Shown: positions 10,369 to 59,000 of the stretch, one piece after another | Layout: every line of letters begins with the position of its first letter | How positions within the stretch are numbered: position 1 is the stretch's first letter | Assembly (NCBI RefSeq): GCF_021869535.1 | Contig: NW_026262637.1 | Coordinates: 19,034,001 to 19,098,000 of the forward strand | Length of the DNA stretch: 64,000 nt | DNA from: Mytilus californianus | Taxonomy: Eukaryota | Reading direction: 5' to 3' | Position numbers and translations under genes: made by a program | Notes under the pieces: model-generated | The model's input: only the letters and a program-made list of their open reading frames with translations | What the model was told of the DNA's origin: nothing | Database searches by the model: none

Positions 10369-11278
10369 ATCTGCATTCCCATGGGAACCAACTATGCCCC
10401 TCTTCTTGCCGACTTGTTCCTTTATTCACATGAGGCTAGCTTCATACAGGAACTTCTCAGGAAGAAAGAAAAGAAGTTAGCAGTATCCTTTAACTTAACT
10501 TTCCGCTACATAGATGATGTTCTCTCACTAAATAATTCAAAATTTGGTGACGATGTTGAACGCATCTATCCAATCGAACTTGAGATAAAGGATACAACAG
10601 ATACAGTTAAGTCTGCCTCATATCTTGACTTACATCTAGAAATTGACAATTAGGGTCGGTTGAAAACAAAACTTTATGACAAAAGAGATGATTTTAGCTA
10701 CCCAATTGTGAACTTTCCATTTTTATGTAGCAACATTCCAGCAGCGCCTGCATACGGAGTATATATCTCCCAGTTGATATGATACTCCAGGGCTTGTATT
10801 TTCTATCACGATTTCCTTAATAGAGGGTTGCTGCTCATAAGGAAGCTATTAAACCAAGAGTTTCAAGTGGTGAAGTTGAAATCATCCCTTCGTAAATTTA
10901 CGGACGCCATCGCGAGTTGGTTGACCGTTACGGAAAACCCGTTTCACAGATGATAGCGGATATGTTCATAGCGTCGTAACTACGATGCAGTCCCCTTTTC
11001 CCGAATGTGACCTACCGAATTAGACTTATTACCGAGTTTGTACTAACATGAGCAACACGACGGGTGCCACATGTGGAGCAGGATCTGCTTACCCTTCCGG
11101 AGTTCAGAAATCACCCCCAGTTTTTGGCGGGGTTCGTGTTCCTCAGTCTTTAGTTTTTCTATGTTCTGATTGTGTACTATTGTTTGTCTGTTTGTCATTT
11201 TCTTTTAGCCATGGCGTTGTCAGTTTATTTTCGACTTATGAGTTTGAATGTCCCTTTGGTATCTTTCGCTCCTCTTTT
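10369..11278 (+). mobile_element. 5'-truncated Penelope-like (Naiad-type) retroelement: RT C-terminal half plus 3' UTR
   Basis: Translates to [17 protein letters not shown]...[12 protein letters not shown]...YLDLHLEIDN, then TAG (10651-53), then KTKLYDKRDDF...[17 protein letters not shown]. The 3' UTR (ggagcaggatctgcttacccttccgg...) is shared with the copies at 46464 and 53165. Confidence 0.88.
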
Positions 11279-12244
11279 AAAAAGGAGTTGTTTTCTTTTT
11301 TTTAAATCGATTCTTATTGCTGGTGATGCATACATAGGAGGAGAGCCTTACTAGTCTCGATTCGGTTTTAATTGTTAAAATTCTTTTGAGTTTTGTATTT
11401 TAATCATAATTTGTATACTTTGATTTACACGACTTGAACATTGATAAAGTCCTATTGCCTTAAATGAGTAAATTTAAACTTAATCTTAATCGTATTACCC
11501 GATGATTAATAAAAAAACAAATAGAAACTAAGGTTCCAACTTTCTCATTCAAAGTTCACCTCAGATGATTCGGCTATTCTTTCGATTCCCATTTTGGTCT
11601 AAAGAGTCTAACTTGTGTACGTACATTTACAGCCCTGTCTTTTAAGTGAATATGACTTAAGATTTAACAACATAAACTCACAAAAACACCAGTTGATAGA
11701 TTGTTTGTTCATATATGTAGATACAGAGACACGATATTATCTCCGAACAATTCATATTTCTCTTAATGTATCAATTCAATTCAATTCACCAATTTAGTTC
11801 ACTCTTCGGGTAATACTAAATTGATAACAAGTTTCTAAAGAAACTTAGTTTAACTCCGTTACATGTTCATGTGTTTGTTAAAAATAAGGCAACGTGCAGT
11901 GATTGCCTTATGTCATTTATCCATGATTACATTAAATATGAATTGTTGGTTTTGTCTCTTAGTTGTTTTTTTTTTTTTTGTTTATCAATTTCATTTTTAT
12001 TTTATTTTTATGCGAATTTGGTTTCTGTATACATTTTTCTTATTGGTGCGATTTATAGCTTGACATCTGGAAAGCACCTGTCTAATGTTGCAGACGTTAT
12101 TTGGAACTCTAAATGTCGTTTATATGTTCATGTTGGGTAGCTATCTCATTGAGGTATACCTTAACTCTTCTTTTATCTATAATAAGTAAAATTGGTTTAT
12201 TCATTTTCAATTATTATTTTCATCTCACATATCCTAGTTAGATT

Positions 12245-46239: not shown

Positions 46240-46463
46240 TCTCAAGGCCATAATGGTTAAAATTCCAAAACCTAATATAAACGTCGAAGAGGTGATAAAA
46301 CTAAAAAGGACAAAAAGAAAGTCCAATTATCTTTCAAATGTTGTGACCATTTTATCAACGTATGGAAGTCTAGCGACGAGTTATATTAAATTCATCTACA
46401 AAACTTTTCTCAGACAGAAACCAAAGTTGCTACTCTTCATTTTAATTCAATGGATATATTCGT

Positions 46464-48960
46464 AAAAGAGAGGCGAAAGATACCAAGGGAACATTCAAAC
46501 TCAAAAGTCGAAAATAAACTGACAACGCCGTGGCATAAAATGGAAAACACCAAAAGACAAACAACAGTATACAAAGCATAACATAGAAAACTAAAGACTG
46601 GGCAACACCAACCCTACCCAAAACCGGGGGTGATCTCAGGTGCTCCAGAAGGAAAGCAGTTCCTGCTCCACATGTGGCACCCATCGTGTTGTTCATGTTA
46701 TTATAATCCCAGTGATAATTCGGGAAAAGGGGGACAGGATTGTGGTTATAACGATCAAAACATATCCGTCGTCATCTGTGAAGCAGTATTCGATAACGGT
46801 CAACCAACTCTTGATGGCGTCCGTAAAATTTTCGAAAGAATGATTTCAACTTCACCACTTGGAACTCTTGGTTTAATAGCTTCCTTCTGAGCAGCACCTC
46901 TCTTTCAAGGAAATCATGATAGGAAACGCAAGCCCAGGAATATCGTTTCAACTGGGAGATATATACTATATATGCAGGCGCTGCTGGAATATGTTGCTAC
47001 ATAGAATTGTAAAGTTCACAATAGGGAAGCTGAAATCATCTCTTTTGTCGTAAAGTTTTGTTCTCAACCAACCCTCATTGTCAATTTCTAGATGTAAGTC
47101 AAGATATGAGCCAGACTTAACTGTATCTATTGTATCCTTTATTTCAAGTTCGATGGGATAGATGCGTTCAACAAAGTCACCAAACTTTGAATTATTTAGT
47201 AGGAGAACATCATCTATATAGCGGAATGTGAAGTTAAAGGATAATGCTAGCTTCTTTTCATTAGGAAGTCAGCCTGAAATAAATAAAAAATAAAAATGTC
47301 GGCAAGAAATGGAACAGTTGGTTCCAATGCCAATTGTTTGTTGAAAAACACGTCCTCCAAACGTAACAAATATGTTGTCAATCAGGAAATCAAGCATCTT
47401 GATAATGTCAGTTTCAGGGAATTTTTATTTGAATCAGAGTGACTTTTTGCAAAGTACGATGTATCCTTTCCTAAGACAATATACTTGTATCGACCATTCT
47501 TTTTTATGAAACAACGCAGGACCAACTCTTTCAATTTGTCTTTTAGTTCGGAATGGGGATTTCTTGTGTAAAGTGTAGAAAGTCAAATGTTTTAATACTA
47601 TTATAAAATCTTTATAGTTTTAGATTGTATGTTCTCTTACAGATCTTTGAGATTTTTTTAGTATCCAATCTGATTCACGCCGCCTCTAGAATAGGTAGTT
47701 TCACAATAACCTTGAATCCCAGCTTTGATTGCTGATAAAAAAAATGTTGTTTATAATCTAGAAAAAGGATTCGTGGACGACCCAGTAATATAACGTTGTT
47801 TGTAAGGACATTTATGTAATTTAGGCATCCAATACGGTAAAGGAAGATCCAGTTCTTCATCTTTGGTTGCAATCCCAAAGGAACATCGAACAGACCTATG
47901 ATTATCTAGGATTTCCTCCTTGGTAAGTGTCATGGGTGTATATGTTGAGTTTCAAAGTGAATTGTCAATACCTAATTCAATTATTAAGCAGTTGATGTAA
48001 TGTGATTTACACACGAAACGATGTTATTTTATCTGCGGGAACAGCAACATTTTTGGCAACATTTGGGTCATAAAATATTGATGTAGCATGTGTATTCATA
48101 GACCCATTCAGTTTTAATTCTGATTTGTTTCAACGACCTCACAACCTCAATCCATTCCTAAAGAGTATCTACGTCTTCTTTCTCACGTTTAGCCCATAGC
48201 CTGGCATTATCGTCGACTGAATCCATCAGTATTTTCAAGTTGTATTTCCAATTGATGGATTTAGACCCACGATATTTCGGACCTTTGGATAACACATTTT
48301 GCAGAGAAGAGTTATTGACAATGTTTAGGTCACCAGTAATACCGTGGCCAGTCGTACTGTATATGAATGGGGAACAAGCACAGGTGAAATCAGGGGGCTT
48401 AGACTTGAAGGCGTCAATATTGAGATCCTGCACCGCGTGTTTGAAATTGAAAATTTTAGTTGTATTCAATTGGTACAGGTATAAAAAATGATAGGTGCAG
48501 AATGATTTTTAGAATAGGGAGGTATTTCCGAGTGAACTGATTTATAATGAAAGATGTTGCCCAAATTGATGGCATCGAGACCTTTGTTGGCAAAGGAAAG
48601 TTTTAGAAAGGATCTTTTCTTCTTTTCACCTTTACCAATGCGAACTGGTTTGAAAAGTCTGTGATTGATAATTTCGGAGATGATAGCTGTCATAACATTA
48701 ACGGTACAAATTTTTCTGCACCAGATGCGCATTTCGACAATTATGATGCGAACTTGCATATGAAGGATTGGATTGATCAGGCGGATAAAAATGCTGGTAA
48801 ACAATGTCGCTTGCATTGTTGTTGATGTCTGATCTATGGCCGCACATACTTAAATCCTTTCGTTTCAGCGATATATACCAATCCGCAAAGGTTACACTCT
48901 AATCCGTAGACGAGATTCGTAAGTGAGAAATCCGTAATTGGTGGTGATGTGGTCTGTTGA
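46464..48960 (-). mobile_element. Degraded Naiad-type Penelope-like retroelement (~2.5 kb, internal deletions) with GIY-YIG endonuclease upstream of the RT
   Basis: The minus strand gives TNLVYGLECNLCGLVYIAETK (~48920-48858, GIY-YIG-like), then LSKGPKYR (PLE-typical), LYWx[13 protein letters not shown] and the shared 3' UTR. An N-terminal EN is the known hallmark of the Naiad/Chlamys clade. Confidence 0.85.
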
Positions 48961-53000: not shown

Positions 53001-56000
53001 TTTCATCTTGTCTCTCAGTTCATCTAGTTCTTGTTTGATTGGCGCTCTGAAGTAGTACTCTAGTTCAGTGAATTCTGGTATTATGTTTGGTTTGATACCC
53101 CCTTTGTTTATTATTCCTAAAAGATAATCTTTTATTTTACTAATCAGAGGACTCTATTTAATTAAAAGAGGGACGAAAGAATCCAGAGGGACAGTCAAAC
53201 TCACAGATCGAAAAAAAAACTGACAACGCCATGGCCAAAAATAAAAAGACAAACTGACAAATAATAGTACAGATGACACATAGAAAACTAAGCAACGCGA
53301 ACCCCACCAAAAACTGGGGGTGATCTCAGGTGCTCCGGAAGGGTAAGCAGATCCTGCTCCATATGTGGCACCCGTCGTGTTGCTTATGTTATTACAAATC
53401 CGGTAAATAGTCTAATTCGGTAGGTCACATTCGTGAAAAGGGAAGGGTATTGTAGTTACGACATAAGGAACATATCCGATATCATCTGTGAAACGGTTAT
53501 TCCATAACGGTCAACCAACTCGTGATGGCGTCCGTAAAATTTACGAAGTGATGATTTCAACTTCACCATTTGGAACTCTTGGTTTAATAGCTTCCTTGTG
53601 AGCAGCAATCCTCTAGTAAGGAAATCATGATAGGAAATACAAGCCCGGGAATATCGTATCAATTGGGAGATATATACTCCGTATGCAGGCGCTGCTGGAA
53701 TGTTGCTACATAGAAATGGAAATTTCACAATTGGGAAGCTGAAATCATCTTTTTTGTCGTAAAGTTTTGTTTTCAACCGATCCTCATTGTCAATTTCTAG
53801 ATGAAAGTCAAGATATGGGGCAGACTTAACTGTATCTGTAGTATCCTTTATCTCTAGTTCGATGGGATAGATTCGTTCAACATAGTCACTAAATTTTGTA
53901 TTATTTAGTGAGAGAACATCATCTATATAGCGGAACGTAGAGTTAAAGGATATTGCTAACTTCTTATCTTTCTTCCTAAGAAGTTCATGTATGAAGTCAG
54001 CCTCATAATAATAAAGAAACAAGTCGGCAAGAAGAGGGGCACAATTGGTTCCCATTGGAATTCCCACAGTCTGTTGAAAAACACGTCCTCCAAACGTAAC
54101 AAATATGTTGTCAATCAAGAAATCAAGCATCTTGAGGTGTAATACCACCATTGATTTTCCCCTATTAGTCTTTGTTAAATTTGCACTTTTCAAAAAATTG
54201 TGCAGAATTTATCTTTGTTTCAAATAAAGAAATACTTGGCATGAGTAAAGTTTGATCCTGTGCAGTACTATAGAAAAAATTTCACATAACATTTCATTGC
54301 ATATAAGAAAATAACCATCACTGGAAGTTAACCAATCAAATTTTCCCCCTTTTTTAACCTGTGTACAAGCTTTAGTAACCATGTAACCTCAAGTTTCCAA
54401 AATATTCTATAGAAACCCCAAATAAAAAAATAATGGTGCTTTGAAATACCCAAGATATATGTTTATGACCCAGAAATGTTTTACTGCAATGAAATGTTGG
54501 ATCAGTTACCTACAACTGTCAAATTCCAGGGAATATTTTTTTTCGACCTATTTTCGTATGCAACCGGATGTGACGTACTATGATTTGGTGGTATTACACC
54601 TAAAGAAGACTTTTTTGTTAAATAAACTGAATGTGACTTTTTTCCTTTGTAATACTGGTTATTTCAAGCATTCCTGTCAAGTTTTGTCATAATCAGTTCA
54701 ATAGTTTGAGAAAAATCTAGTATAATGTAAGACGACATCTACAGCGATTCGAGCTAAATTTCTTCGAAAAATCCAAACCAAGCCGCATCATGATATAATA
54801 TAGTGTGGACCAATAAATGATCAAATATTTATCTCATCTGCCTACAAACAGTTGAATATGATACAAAAGATGACTTTAGGATGATAAATACTACTAATGG
54901 ACCTCTTTGTCTTCCTTATAAGGTCTCTTTTGGTCCATTTATACCTCTCATTTCCTCAAAATTTCTACTTTATAGGCCAATAAATAAAAATTTGGGGGTA
55001 ACTTTCACTCATTTATGATAGAAATGTTATAATAAATGATTAATTGAAGTATTCAAGCTGAATGAACTATCCGTATAAAAGTTTACTGTCTCCAAGGAGG
55101 TTTCAATAAGTCCTTACGTAAAACTTAAATTTACGCCGCGTTCCAGAGAGGGACATAAAAAGCTTCTCTTTTGGTGAATAATTTGTTGTTACTGCTTTAA
55201 AAATAATTTCATTTACTTAAAACTATATATTTATTAAAGTATTACTTAGGAAAAATTTTCTAGTATAGCAGAATATAAGAAAAAAGGAGAAAAAGCTCCC
55301 CAAAACTCTAAGTATGGCTTATTCTGTCAACTAATATTCATGGTAAAGTCCTATTTCAAGGAAATTTTCTCATAAAATGTGTTTTGGAGACTCAATCCAC
55401 TCAGAATATTTCATTATTAGTAATATTTCACTTAAATAGCAAGAAATTTTAACACATGAGAGTACTCACAAGGTCAAAGGTGCATGTACAGCTTCCCATA
55501 ATAGGTGTAATACCACCATTGATTTTCCCCTATTAGTCTTTGTTAAATTTGCACTTTTCAAAAAATTGTGCAGAATTTATCTTTGTTTCAAATAAAGAAA
55601 TACTTGGCATGAGTAAAGTTTGATCCTGTGCAGTACTATAGAAAAAATTTCACATAACATTTCATTGCATATAAGAAAATAACCATCACTGGAAGTTAAC
55701 CAATCAAATTTTCCCCCTTTTTTAACCTGTGTACAAGCTTTAGTAACCATGTAACCTCAAGTTTCCAAAATATTCTATAGAAACCCCAAATAAAAAAATA
55801 ATGGTGCTTTGAAATACCCAAGATATATGTTTATGACCCAGAAATGTTTTACTGCAATGAAATGTTGGATCAGTTACCTACAACTGTCAAATTCCAGGGA
55901 ATATTTTTTTCGACCTATTTTCGTATGCAACCGGATGTGACGTACTATGATTTGGTGGTATTACACCTAAAGAAGACTTTTTTGTTAAATAAACTGAATG

Positions 56001-59000
56001 TGACTTTTTTCCTTTGTAATACTGGTTATTTCAAGCATTCCTGTCAAGTTTTGTCATAATCAGTTCAATAGTTTGAGAAAAATCTAGTATAATGTAAGAC
56101 GACATCTACAGCGATTCGAGCTAAATTTCTTCGAAAAATCCAAACCAAGCCGCATCATGATATAATATAGTGTGGACCAATAAATGATCAAATATTTATC
56201 TCATCTGCCTACAAACAGTTGAATATGATACAAAAGATGACTTTAGGATGATAAATACTACTAATGGACCTCTTTGTCTTCCTTATAAGGTCTCTTTTGG
56301 TCCATTTATACCTCTCATTTCCTCAAAATTTCTACTTTATAGGCCAATAAATAAAAATTTGGGGGTAACTTTCACTCATTTATGATAGAAATGTTATAAT
56401 AAATGATTAATTGAAGTATTCAAGCTGAATGAACTATCCGTATAAAAGTTTACTGTCTCCAAGGAGGTTTCAATAAGTCCTTACGTAAAACTTAAATTTA
56501 CGCCGCGTTCCAGAGAGGGACATAAAAAGCTTCTCTTTTGGTGAATAATTTGTTGTTACTGCTTTAAAAATAATTTCATTTACTTAAAACTATATATTTA
56601 TTAAAGTATTACTTAGGAAAAATTTTCTAGTATAGCAGAATATAAGAAAAAAGGAGAAAAAGCTCCCCAAAACTCTAAGTATGGCTTATTCTGTCAACTA
56701 ATATTCATGGTAAAGTCCTATTTCAAGGAAATTTTCTCATAAAATGTGTTTTGGAGACTCAATCCACTCAGAATATTTCATTATTAGTAATATTTCACTT
56801 AAATAGCAAGAAATTTTAACACATGAGAGTACTCACAAGGTCAAAGGTGCATGTACAGCTTCCCATAATAGGTGTAATACCACCATTGATTTTCCCCTAT
56901 TAGTCTTTGTTAAATTTGCACTTTTCAAAAAATTGTGCAGAATTTATCTTTGTTTCAAATAAAGAAATACTTGGCATGAGTAAAGTTTGATCCTGTGCAG
57001 TACTATAGAAAAAATTTCACATAACATTTCATTGCATATAAGAAAATAACCATCACTGGAAGTTAACCAATCAAATTTTCCCCCTTTTTTAACCTGTGTA
57101 CAAGCTTTAGTAACCATGTAACCTCAAGTTTCCAAAATATTCTATAGAAACCCCAAATAAAAAAATAATGGTGCTTTGAAATACCCAAGATATATGTTTA
57201 TGACCCAGAAATGTTTTACTGCAATGAAATGTTGGATCAGTTACCTACAACTGTCAAATTCCAGGGAATATTTTTTTTCGACCTATTTTCGTATGCAACC
57301 GGATGTGACGTACTATGATTTGGTGGTATTACACCTTGATAATGTCAGTTTCAGAGAATTTTTTGTTTGAATCAGAGTGATTCTTTACAAAGTAGGATTT
57401 ATCCCCCCAGCCCTCCCCCCCCCCCCCCCCCCCCCCCCAAGACAAGATACTTGTATCTACGTTCGCCATTCTTTTATCTTAAATATATTCAAATAAAAAC
57501 AAGATTATAAAACATAAACATTTTTCAAATACAGCTACCCTATTTGGCGTATATTAACTTCATTTGTCTGAAATTGAATTATCTCAAACAAACACATTTT
57601 ATTTTGCCAGTTTTTATGGACTCCCCCTTTTTGAATTTGCCTTGGAGTTCGGTATTTTTGTTATACTTTTTTACCTCAATGGAAATTAATTTAGAACAGG
57701 CAGTAGTACATGTTTGCAATATCTAAATATGTGATAGTAAAAAACAGGAATGTTATTTTACACTCCAAAGAAATAATTTCAATCGTATTAAATAAGAAAA
57801 ATGAAATCCTATTTGAATACATACATCAAGAAAAAAAGTATCGGAAAACTCCAAATGTATCGACAGGGTAGGCGTCTCCTTCCATTACTGCAGCACTTGC
57901 AATGCAAATTCAGATTCATTAAAGGTCGGGGTATACAATAGGACACAGATATTTACAGATCTGACAACCATACTCAGCGTCTTAATGCCAAATACCGCGA
58001 TAAAAACTTGCCTTTTGAGAGCCTCAGGCATATTTCATCAGTCAACAAATTTATGGGCATGATCCTTTTAAGGTAGCACTACAGTCAGACTTTTTTTATT
58101 CCAACCAACAGTATTTGAAGGTTAATTTCTCCAAAACTGCTCAATGGATTTTGAAAATCTATGATTAAAAGATATTTGTTATATGATCAATTAAAAAATA
58201 TAGCTCAATAACTGCCAAAAAGTGCTCTTTCAACTTGGAGGAAAAAAGCACATTCATGTCAAATCGTAGTAAAAATGTGTTTTCATCCCTTTAATTGACC
58301 ATACACAAACTACAAAACTGTGTCTCATATTTTTGATAAATGCCTCCAGTTAGAAGATATATTGATTTAACTGCTGGGTGCCATACCTCATTTCACCTTT
58401 CATCTTTTGAGACCTATAAATTCTTTCAGAAACAGATTATCCAAAAACTGGGACACAGTTTTGTACAAATTACTCCCTTGAATCACATATATCAAAAGAT
58501 ATAAGAAGATGTGGTATGAGTGCCAATGAGACAACTCTCCATCCAAGTCACAATTTGTAAAAGTAAATCATTATTGGTCAAAGTACGGCCTTCAACCCGG
58601 AGCTTTGGCTCACACCGAACAGCAAGCTATAAAGGGCCCAAAAAATTACTAGTGTAAAACCATTCAAACAGGAAAACCAACGGTCTAATCTATATAAAAA
58701 AACAAGAAACGAGAAACACTTATGAACCACATCAACTAACGACAATCACTGAAAATCAGATTTCTGACTTAGGACAGGTGCAAACAAATGCATCGGGTTT
58801 AAACGTTTTAATAGGAGCCAAACCAAAGGGGATACCAATAAAGTTTCTATTTTAATTTTTTGATAACAATTCTCATTAAAAATTGTTAGGAAAAAATCAA
58901 CTAAAAAAACTGAATACTCCCTTTGAACCCCTATAAATGCTATATAAATATCAAAACTCTTCTGGAAATACCCCAGGAGTGTTCTGACACTCTTACGTTA

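What the first reader, a model, noticed from the sequence alone, without database searches (positions are those of the whole stretch)
54132..57339. Composite-transposon-like array: MITE-spacer-MITE-spacer-MITE bounded by one target-site duplication
Seen in sequence: three directly repeated TIR elements (465/464/465 bp) alternate with two 903-bp spacers that appear identical by eye. Only the outermost ends carry the matching 4-bp TSD ttga. The uninterrupted PLE copy at 47391-47415 (caagcatcttgataatgtc) shows the empty site with a single ttga. Internal junctions have different flanks (taaa / aata), and the spacer has no TIR or ORF. Inference: two MITEs mobilised the intervening foreign DNA as a unit, like bacterial IS-flanked composite transposons or IS26-type translocatable-unit arrays. 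The MITE+spacer module then amplified in tandem. This would be a route for DNA-transposon-mediated transduction and for satellite birth. The units are nearly identical, so the event is very recent or the copy number is an assembly artefact.
Basis: partly seen in the sequence, partly recalled or inferred. Interest (0 to 1): 0.7.

Follow-up and report, generated by a model that had tools for sequence, protein, structure and literature searches.

The report
Non-autonomous KolobokP transposon dimer in mussel
The repeat-spacer-repeat-spacer-repeat block is real. It is a two-unit tandem copy of a gene-less member of KolobokP, a composite-like DNA transposon lineage of bivalves described in 2022, so it is a tidy example and not a new kind of element.

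Summary
Three direct copies of a 465/464/465-bp element (A, with 15-bp terminal inverted repeats) alternate with two identical 903-bp segments (B). The block sits inside a decayed retroelement copy and is flanked by a TTGA duplication. A paralogous copy in the window shows the empty site.

This is not a local one-off. The genome (California mussel, according to an earlier scan note) holds at least 3,552 A ends and 1,840 A-to-B junctions. Forms present:
- Solo A copies, 83-99% identical to the window's A.
- A-B-A monomers.
- (A-B)n-A arrays, the longest seen 45 kb and 33 units.
- A-(B)n-A arrays.

All are bounded by target duplications of mostly 4 bp, sometimes 3 or 5.

These features match KolobokP (Kojima and Bao 2022, PMC9587614):
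- Long terminal direct repeats of about 450 bp.
- Each repeat carries its own 11-18-bp inverted repeats with RR..YY tips.
- Solo repeats, multimers, and INT-INT joints with small deletions occur.

B has no coding capacity, so this family is non-autonomous. I did not identify its autonomous partner. "Captured foreign DNA" and "very recent local event" are not supported. I could not check the copy number against reads. Novelty: a new member of a known kind. The scan has already noted KolobokP copies elsewhere in this genome.

The parts
54132..54135 (.). Left target-site duplication, TTGA
   Evidence: It matches 57336-57339. The paralogous empty site has a single TTGA.
54136..54600 (+). LTDR 1 (A), 465 bp, with 15-bp TIRs GGTGTAATACCACCA at both ends and GG..CC tips
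   Evidence: Identical to LTDR 3.
54601..55503 (+). INT 1 (B), 903 bp, non-coding internal region. It starts TAAAG and ends CATAATA.
   Evidence: Identical to INT 2. It is 97.2-99.3% identical to the 66 other genomic copies compared.
55504..55967 (+). LTDR 2 (A), 464 bp, shared by the two units. It has T7 instead of T8 at about position 408.
55968..56870 (+). INT 2 (B), 903 bp
56871..57335 (+). LTDR 3 (A), 465 bp
57336..57339 (.). Right target-site duplication, TTGA
53163..54131 (-). Left part of the interrupted host repeat, a decayed retroelement with weak RVT_1 similarity
   Evidence: aligns to 46463-47466 and, in part, to 10375-11280. RVT_1 E 0.0039, below threshold.
57340..57404 (-). Right part of the interrupted host repeat, as far as it aligns
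47399..47402 (.). Empty target site (single TTGA) in the paralogous host-repeat copy

Best explanation
The block is one insertion of a non-autonomous KolobokP DNA transposon in dimer form, (LTDR-INT)2-LTDR.

Parts: A is the long terminal direct repeat (LTDR), 465 bp, with its own 15-bp inverted ends. B is a gene-less 903-bp internal region (INT).

Inferred mechanism, following the published model for the lineage:
- A Kolobok-type DDD/E transposase supplied in trans by an autonomous KolobokP recognises the short TIRs.
- Using the outermost pair of TIRs, it moves the whole unit and creates a 4-bp target duplication, here TTGA.
- Because every LTDR carries both TIRs, single LTDRs can also be cut out. 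This leaves INT-INT joints and gives mobile solo LTDRs.
- The direct LTDRs let the unit number grow and shrink in place. This could happen by unequal crossover, possibly provoked by the lineage's His-Me nuclease, or by a circular LTDR-INT intermediate.

The window's dimer arose in one of two ways. A monomer duplicated after insertion, or a dimer was cut out of an already homogeneous array.

Shown here: the anatomy, the target duplication and empty site, the family census, the in-place homogeneity of arrays, and the INT-INT joints.

Inferred: the enzyme, action in trans, and the route of multimerisation.
For: Anatomy and empty site.

Family census by exact patterns:
- 3,552 A right ends.
- 1,840 of them run straight into B.
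- 339 B starts are not preceded by A.
- 117 B ends are not followed by A.

Forms seen:
- Solo A, 83-99% identical to the window's A.
- A-B-A monomers at many unrelated loci.
- Another dimer at C1:10554789-10557525.
- An array of 33 B (INT) units at C1:37854976-37900146, flanked by TTTA on both sides.
- A-(B)~11-A at C13:19061273 onward.
- In the listing, C1:0-91 Mb holds 27 loci with one junction, 1 with two and 6 with four or more.

Target duplications: 21 of 33 scored insertions have a perfect 4-bp duplication. Most fit T-N-N-A (TTTA, TATA, TTAA, TAAA, TACA, TCCA, TTGA). Two are 5 bp and four read as 3 bp.

B-B joints come in three forms that lie 0, 2 or 5 bp from the exact A ends..TATTA|TAAAG....TATTA|AAG.. 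and ..CCCATA|AAG... The 5-bp form also occurs inside an array that carries its own C-to-T variant. These are what cuts at the A ends would leave.

B units cluster by array in a tree, and the A copies of one element share private variants. Both indicate amplification in place.

Match to KolobokP (PMC9587614):
- LTDRs of about 450 or about 660 bp.
- 11-18-bp TIRs with 5'-RR..YY-3' tips.
- Target duplications of 3-4 or 4-5 bp.
- Solo LTDRs, (LTDR-INT)n-LTDR and LTDR-(INT)n-LTDR forms, with micro-deletions at INT-INT joints.
- Non-autonomous families of 1.7-3.3 kb; this monomer is 1,833 bp.
- Abundance in bivalves, including Mytilus.

By eye, the first 45 nt of A share the motif ACCACMATTRATTT..CTATTAGT..CTTT with published Mytilidae LTDR starts (KolobokP-6_MyEd, -1_MyCo, -3_MoPh).

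The genome carries at least 150 zf-His_Me_endon ORFs, many in tandem arrays with 3.6-4.6-kb periods. These are presumably KolobokP multimers carrying the nuclease gene.
Against: - No autonomous partner with the same LTDR was found. A pattern search for the 14-bp TIR followed by non-A sequence gave only point variants of A ends and unrelated repeats. The two His-Me hits within the listed part of contig C1 have no exact A end nearby.
- No coding remnant links B to a KolobokP INT.
- The exact TIR is absent from the paper's supplementary sequences as held, which are machine-read and partly cut.
- LTDR homology to published families rests on a by-eye comparison of about 45 nt, not on a scored alignment.
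- The unit number in this window could not be checked against reads.
Confidence: 0.85

Rival explanations
1. This is a fresh composite transposon. Two independent insertions of a MITE (A) 903 bp apart trapped unrelated host DNA (B). The outer TIRs then moved the trio, and B is not descended from a KolobokP internal region.
For: - B has no ORF or Pfam signal.
- B's tips, TAAA and ATTA/AATA, are AT-rich 4-mers like the family's usual targets, as expected if they were the inner target duplications of two separate insertions.
- Solo A copies reach lower identity (83%) than any A seen next to B (88%).
Against: - The LTDR-INT-LTDR architecture, the 465-bp repeat size class, the RR..YY tips and every derivative form are those of an old, widespread lineage whose non-autonomous members have short non-coding INTs.
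- The A-B association spans 88-100% identity.
- No donor locus with B alone was seen. Every B-B array examined is A-bounded.
Confidence: 0.07
2. This is a non-autonomous LTR retrotransposon (TRIM/LARD type). A is the LTR, B is the internal region, solo A copies are solo LTRs, and the arrays are tandem LTR-internal arrays.
For: - Direct terminal repeats, 4-5-bp target duplications, solo repeats and tandem arrays.
- Both A copies of a monomer share private substitutions (7 shared against 9 unshared across 10 monomers), as if regenerated at each cycle.
- A TGT..ACA motif lies 2 nt inside each A end.
Against: - The ends are GG..CC, not TG..CA.
- The 15-bp perfect TIR is far longer than usual for LTRs.
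- No TGG-initiated primer-binding site follows A in the forward orientation. The only TGG in the reverse orientation is followed by sequence with no resemblance to a tRNA acceptor or T arm (read).
- There is no polypurine tract before the downstream A, and no tRNA-like element.
- Three kinds of B-B joint lie within 5 bp of the exact A ends, which fits cut-out and not reverse transcription.
- The shared private variants are also explained by copies being drawn from arrays homogenised in place.
Confidence: 0.04
3. B is an older satellite of about 900 bp that a MITE (A) invaded once. The A+B higher-order unit then spread.
For: Pure B arrays with periods of 898-901 bp exist, for example 10 monomers at C13:19062635-19070746 and a mixed array of about 90 kb at C13:58.93-59.02 Mb.
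Against: - The flanks of A inside arrays (ATTA|A|TAAA) cannot be derived from any of the three B-B joints by a 3-5-bp target duplication.
- The examined B arrays are bounded by complete A copies and their own target duplications.
- B-B joints are of several kinds, as footprints would be.
Confidence: 0.03
4. The element is real, but the count of two units here is an assembly error, either a collapsed or an expanded tandem repeat.
For: The units are 100% identical apart from one homopolymer base, the situation in which assemblers miscount. I could make no read check.
Against: - A dimer and many other unit numbers occur elsewhere in this assembly, with clean target duplications.
- The 3.2-kb block is well within long-read length.
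- The middle LTDR carries its own T7/T8 difference.
Confidence: 0.1

Closest known systems
KolobokP DNA transposons (Kojima and Bao 2022, Mob DNA 13:24, PMC9587614), especially the non-autonomous families (e.g. KolobokP-4N1_CorFlu, KolobokP-7N2_CorFlu) and the Mytilidae families with LTDRs of about 450 bp
   Same: - LTDR-INT-LTDR plan.
- LTDR of 465 bp with its own 15-bp TIR and GG..CC tips.
- Target duplications of 4 bp, sometimes 3 or 5.
- Solo LTDRs, (LTDR-INT)n-LTDR multimers, and LTDR-(INT)n-LTDR with small deletions at INT-INT joints.
- Monomer length of 1,833 bp, within the published non-autonomous range.
- Bivalve host.
- The first 45 nt of the LTDR share a motif with published Mytilidae LTDRs (by eye).
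   Different: - The species is not in the paper's species table (Table 1), and this exact TIR is not in its supplementary sequences as held.
- The INT is very short (903 bp) with no coding remnant.
- Copy number and array sizes are much larger than in the paper's tables: at least 3,552 LTDR ends, arrays of 33 units, and INT-only runs of 10 or more units against 4 at most there.
- LTDR-LTDR joints with 4-10-bp spacers occur; the paper's main text does not mention them.
- The autonomous partner was not identified.
Bacterial composite transposons and IS26 translocatable-unit arrays
   Same: Two self-contained TIR elements in direct orientation bracket a segment. The outer ends move the whole. Arrays of element+segment share one element between units.
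   Different: The flanking repeats encode no transposase. In autonomous relatives the enzyme lies in the internal region. No circular unit or targeted conservative integration has been shown. The host is eukaryotic.
TRIM/LARD non-autonomous LTR retrotransposons (e.g. biv-TRIM, PMC6934838)
   Same: Direct terminal repeats around a short internal domain, solo repeats, tandem arrays sharing a repeat, and short target duplications.
   Different: There is no TG..CA, primer-binding site or polypurine tract. The TIRs are long. The repeat itself is excised. biv-TRIM has 202-218-bp repeats and a 77-80-bp internal domain and is not similar in size.
Tandem-repeat-containing MITEs of bivalves (DTC84 of Donax, pearl/CvA of oysters) and Helentron-borne satellites (PMC3879986, PMC7492417)
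   Same: A bivalve mobile element that carries and disperses tandem repeats, giving short satellite-like arrays across the genome.
   Different: In those elements, short core repeats sit between two different arms of one element. Here, whole TIR-bearing repeats alternate with the internal region, and the ends make target duplications, unlike Helentrons.

Membership tests
KolobokP (Kolobok superfamily) | [quoted passage not shown] | tested here: met
   A-B-A-B-A in the window. A-B-A monomers at more than 10 unrelated loci.
KolobokP (Kolobok superfamily) | Each LTDR has its own short (11-18 bp) terminal inverted repeats with 5'-RR..YY-3' tips | tested here: met
   15-bp perfect TIR, GG..CC tips.
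KolobokP (Kolobok superfamily) | LTDR length of about 450 bp or about 660 bp | tested here: met
   465/464 bp. Published Mytilus families have LTDRs of 447-464 bp.
KolobokP (Kolobok superfamily) | Target-site duplication of 3-4 or 4-5 bp around monomers, solo LTDRs and multimers | tested here: met
   21 of 33 insertions have a perfect 4-bp duplication, 2 have 5 bp and 4 read as 3 bp. TTGA here, with an empty site.
KolobokP (Kolobok superfamily) | [quoted passage not shown] | tested here: met
   The INT-INT joints lack 0, 2 or 5 bp.
KolobokP (Kolobok superfamily) | [quoted passage not shown] A non-autonomous member shares LTDRs with such a partner. | tested here: inconclusive
   - B is non-coding.
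- The genome has at least 150 His-Me ORFs, many in tandem arrays with 3.6-4.6-kb periods.
KolobokP (Kolobok superfamily) | Sequence homology of the LTDR to named KolobokP LTDRs | tested here: inconclusive
   By eye, 24 of 33 aligned columns match the start of KolobokP-3_MoPh, and a CTATTAGT..CTTT block is shared with KolobokP-6_MyEd. I ran no scored alignment, because the published sequences have no reference usable in the tools.
LTR retrotransposon (TRIM/LARD) | LTR ends TG..CA, a primer-binding site after the 5' LTR, and a polypurine tract before the 3' LTR | tested here: not met
   The ends are GG..CC. No tRNA-complementary site or purine tract is present in either orientation (read). No tRNA-like element was found.
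Bacterial-type composite transposon / IS26 translocatable unit | The flanking elements are autonomous insertion sequences that encode the transposase | tested here: not met
   A is 465 bp. The only ORF touching it (83 aa, running from A into B) has no Pfam hit.
Helitron/Helentron-borne satellite | No target-site duplication, insertion at AT or TT, and a 3' hairpin | tested here: not met
   A clear 4-bp duplication with an empty site.

The most novel reading that the evidence does not exclude
This gene-less KolobokP family may be an active source of satellite DNA in the mussel genome.
- Transposase cuts at internal LTDRs turn (LTDR-INT)n arrays into pure 898-901-bp INT satellites tens of kilobases long. 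These stay bounded by LTDRs and so remain transposable.
- The rare LTDR-spacer-LTDR joints (4-10 bp, made of the two INT tips) are the reciprocal products of cuts at the inner TIR pair.

Together these would be genomic fossils that bear on how KolobokP is cut and rejoined. They would also show that multimerisation does not need a nuclease gene in cis.
Probability: 0.3. Interest if true: 0.45.

Novelty: new member of a known kind. Interest (0 to 1): 0.25.

Why it matters
For annotation, the block should be labelled as one non-autonomous KolobokP dimer. It is not three MITEs plus unknown DNA, and the same applies to several thousand related pieces of this genome. By exact-match counts the family covers at least about 3.6 Mb.

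For biology, the family is a large, young and very regular data set on an unresolved question raised by the 2022 description: how KolobokP units multiply in tandem and how LTDRs are cut out. It contains hundreds of INT-INT footprints, arrays homogenised in place, and a few LTDR-LTDR joints. It also shows a DNA transposon producing 0.9-kb and 1.37-kb satellite-like arrays that stay inside mobile ends.

None of this changes what is known in kind.

Tried and rejected
- Tandem Repeats Finder missed the array because its period limit is 500 bp. The repeat finder found it.
- Autonomous partner, attempt 1: a search for the TIR followed by non-A sequence gave only point variants of A ends and an unrelated 32-bp minisatellite.
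- Autonomous partner, attempt 2: a Pfam PF05551 search found many His-Me ORFs. I did not try to read those letters by other means.
- The paper's supplements do not contain the exact TIR. The text is machine-read and one file is cut.
- An Rfam scan of the region found nothing relevant: one sub-threshold miRNA-like hit in the flank. No tRNA was found.
- B-satellite-first model: rejected, because the flanks of A cannot be derived from the B-B joints by a target duplication.
- LTR/TRIM model: I considered it seriously because both A copies of a monomer share private variants. I rejected it on the ends, the lack of a primer-binding site and polypurine tract, and the excision-type joints.
- biv-TRIM (PMC6934838) is a different, much smaller element.
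- Superfamily assignment from the target duplication alone (piggyBac, PIF/Harbinger, Ginger, Sola): not pursued once the KolobokP match was found.
- Scan notes looked up by place (near) and by sequence returned nothing.


Full report
**What is in the window**

- A 465-bp element, A, occurs three times in direct orientation: 54136-54600, 55504-55967 and 56871-57335.
- The two outer copies are identical. The middle copy lacks one T of a T8 run.
- Each copy starts with GGTGTAATACCACCA and ends with its exact reverse complement.
- Between the A copies lie two identical 903-bp segments, B: 54601-55503 and 55968-56870.
- TTGA flanks the whole block on both sides.
- I joined the two flanks with a single TTGA and compared the result with the rest of the window. 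It aligns collinearly, with no gap at the joint, to a paralogous copy of the same decayed repeat at 46463-47466 (82% over 1,057 bp). That copy has one TTGA at 47399-47402.

So the block is one insertion with a 4-bp target duplication. The host repeat gives only a sub-threshold reverse-transcriptase hit, so I did not verify that it is a Penelope-like element. B has no ORF above 45 aa lying wholly inside it and no Pfam signal. An Rfam scan and a tRNA scan found nothing relevant.

**The same parts in the rest of the genome**

The window is G000:C57:19034001-19098000 of a 1.65-Gb assembly. Both A and B are high-copy.

Exact-pattern counts:
- 3,552 A right ends.
- 1,840 of these run straight into the start of B.
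- 339 B starts are not preceded by A.
- 117 B ends are not followed by A.

In the loci I could fetch the parts combine in a small set of forms:
- Solo A, 83-99% identical to the window's copy.
- A-B-A monomers at many unrelated sites.
- (A-B)n-A arrays.
- A-(B)n-A arrays.

Examples:
- A second dimer at C1:10554789-10557525.
- An array of 33 B (INT) units at C1:37854976-37900146, flanked by TTTA on both sides.
- An A-bounded run of about eleven B units at C13:19061273 onward.

In the part of contig C1 listed (0-91 Mb), 27 loci have one A-to-B junction, one has two, and six have four or more. Exact-match counts alone put the family at about 3.6 Mb or more.

**Target duplications**

I scored 33 insertions.
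- 21 have a perfect 4-bp duplication. Most fit T-N-N-A: TTTA, TATA, TTAA, TAAA, TACA, TCCA, TTGA.
- Two have 5 bp (TACAA, TAGTA).
- Four read as TTAA on the left and TAAA on the right, which amounts to 3 bp.
- The rest are old or mutated copies.

**Joints inside arrays**

A inside an array is flanked by ..ATTA (or ..AATA, as in the window) on the left and TAAAG.. on the right. It therefore has no target duplication of its own.

B-B joints come in three forms:
- The two tips simply abutted: ..CCCATATTA|TAAAGAAG..
- Two bases missing: ..CCCATATTA|AAGAAG..
- Five bases missing: ..CCCATA|AAGAAG..

The five-base form gives the 898-bp period. It also occurs inside the large C1 array, where it carries that array's private C-to-T change, so it formed or spread within that array. 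All three forms are the simplest end-joining products of breaks exactly at the two ends of A. None of them can be turned into the A-containing joint by adding a 3-5-bp target duplication. This argues against the idea that B was a satellite which A invaded.

**Amplification in place**

In a tree of 68 non-redundant B units, every array forms its own tight cluster. The window's two B copies are each other's nearest relatives, at 100% identity. The next closest copies are 99.3% identical.

The A copies belonging to one element share private substitutions. The window's three A copies share four. Three simple monomers share two or three each.

**The LTR-like rival**

The last result is what LTR retrotransposons show, and the block also has direct terminal repeats, solo repeats and 4-5-bp duplications. 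I therefore took a TRIM/LARD reading seriously. It fails on these defining features:
- The ends are GG..CC, not TG..CA.
- The 15-bp inverted termini are unusually long for an LTR.
- There is no TGG-initiated site complementary to a tRNA end next to A in the forward orientation. The only TGG in the reverse orientation is followed by sequence with no resemblance to a tRNA acceptor or T arm.
- There is no purine tract before the downstream A.
- The B-B joints are of the excision type.

The shared private variants are equally well explained if monomers and dimers are cut out of arrays that were homogenised in place. The known bivalve TRIM is a much smaller, unrelated element.

**Identification**

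A literature search on superfamilies with 4-bp duplications turned up Kojima and Bao 2022 (PMC9587614), which describes KolobokP. The description fits point for point:
- LTDR lengths constrained to about 450 or about 660 bp.
- Target duplications of 3-4 or 4-5 bp.
- Frequent solo LTDRs.
- Multimers (LTDR-INT)n-LTDR that share LTDRs.
- LTDR-(INT)n-LTDR forms with micro-deletions of a few bases at the INT-INT joint, explained there by LTDR excision.
- Non-autonomous families of 1.7-3.3 kb.
- Particular abundance in bivalves, including several Mytilus species.

The monomer here is 1,833 bp.

By eye, the first 45 nt of A share a motif with published Mytilidae LTDR starts: ACCAC-M-ATT-R-ATTT, then CTATTAGT, then CTTT. 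A matches the start of KolobokP-3_MoPh in 24 of 33 aligned columns. I ran no scored alignment, because those sequences have no reference usable in the tools.

The genome also carries at least 150 ORFs with the zf-His_Me_endon domain. Many sit in tandem arrays with periods of 3.6-4.6 kb, which I take to be KolobokP multimers carrying the nuclease gene. After I had reached this reading, the scan's own notes showed that other agents had filed KolobokP copies elsewhere in this genome.

**What remains open**

- I did not find the autonomous partner of this particular family. The TIR followed by non-A sequence occurs only as point variants.
- B shows no coding remnant, so its descent from an autonomous INT by deletion is inferred from the architecture and is not shown.
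- The unit number in the window could not be checked against reads.

**How it most likely works**

These steps are inferred from the published model.
- A Kolobok-type transposase made elsewhere in the genome binds the short TIRs.
- The outermost pair moves the whole block and makes the 4-bp duplication.
- Any single LTDR can be cut out. This leaves the INT-INT joints and seeds solo copies.
- The direct LTDRs allow the unit number to change in place. The route could be unequal crossover, a break made by the lineage's nuclease and repaired from the sister chromatid out of register, or re-entry of a circular LTDR-INT unit.

The window's dimer is either a monomer that duplicated after landing in the retroelement copy, or a two-unit piece cut from a homogeneous array. 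The data do not separate these.

**Verdict**

- The claims of captured foreign DNA, a donor locus and a very recent local event are not supported.
- This is a new member of a known kind.

Two side observations may deserve follow-up. The first is the scale of INT-only, satellite-like arrays that stay inside mobile ends. The second is the nine loci where two LTDR ends abut with a 4-10-bp spacer made of the two INT tips. The paper's main text does not mention the latter.

Noticed in passing
G000:C1:39506247-39513158 (L063:961-965 and 2798-2802); also C1:47500538, C99:50495023, C99:75412766, C99:118979419, C143:37901516, C154:91435192, C165:66437148, C172:153034: At 13 sites in 9 loci, two LTDR ends abut with only 4-10 bp between them (TTTA, TAATA, TTTTA, TAATAA, TAAATTA, TATTTATTA, TAAATTATTA). 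Most spacers read as the first few bases of INT plus its last few, as if the whole INT had been removed by cuts at the inner TIR pair. A related variant unit, LTDR-TTTA-INT with a 1,372-bp period, occurs in L067; a 1,372-bp period on contig C41 may be the same variant (inferred from spacing only). The KolobokP paper's main text does not mention such joints.
   Followed up: partly
G000:C13:58933473-59024579; C13:19061273-19071742 (L061, L062): Long arrays in which INT units follow one another without LTDRs (periods 898-901 bp), mixed with LTDR-containing units. One stretch spans about 90 kb. The smaller C13 array is bounded by complete LTDRs, and its last INT is truncated at position 557 by a CATA microhomology deletion.
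   Followed up: partly
G000:C154:57869528-57954194, C88:39608505-39677046, C154:49955633-49996719, C99:49331531-49371828 and others: At least 150 ORFs with the zf-His_Me_endon domain, many intact (133-200 aa open). They sit in regular tandem arrays with periods of 2.2, 3.6-3.7, 4.1 and 4.4-4.6 kb. These are presumably KolobokP multimers of up to about 24 units that carry the nuclease gene.
   Followed up: no
G000:C154:112759614-112776193 and 112846292-112855668 (L043-L053, L059): Several arrays of this family share the same left flank (..CATTACACATAAA) and the same right flank (TAAAACCCGAGAAAAC..). An array plus its surroundings has therefore itself been duplicated, at least three times within about 95 kb.
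   Followed up: no
L067:6189-8213 and L064 (C1:2923599-2925849): Unrelated mobile elements are inserted inside INT copies. One is about 2.0 kb with 40-bp inverted ends starting CACTATAAACCAG. The other is about 2.25 kb.
   Followed up: no
window 57403-57438: A run of 36 C (85% pure) lies 65 bp to the right of the insertion, where the alignment to the paralogous host-repeat copy stops.
   Followed up: no
window 10375-11280, 46463-47466 and 53163-54131: Three copies of the same decayed repeat lie in the window, 82-88% identical. The copy at 53459-54130 (minus strand) gives only a weak RVT_1 hit, so its Penelope-like identity was not checked.
   Followed up: partly
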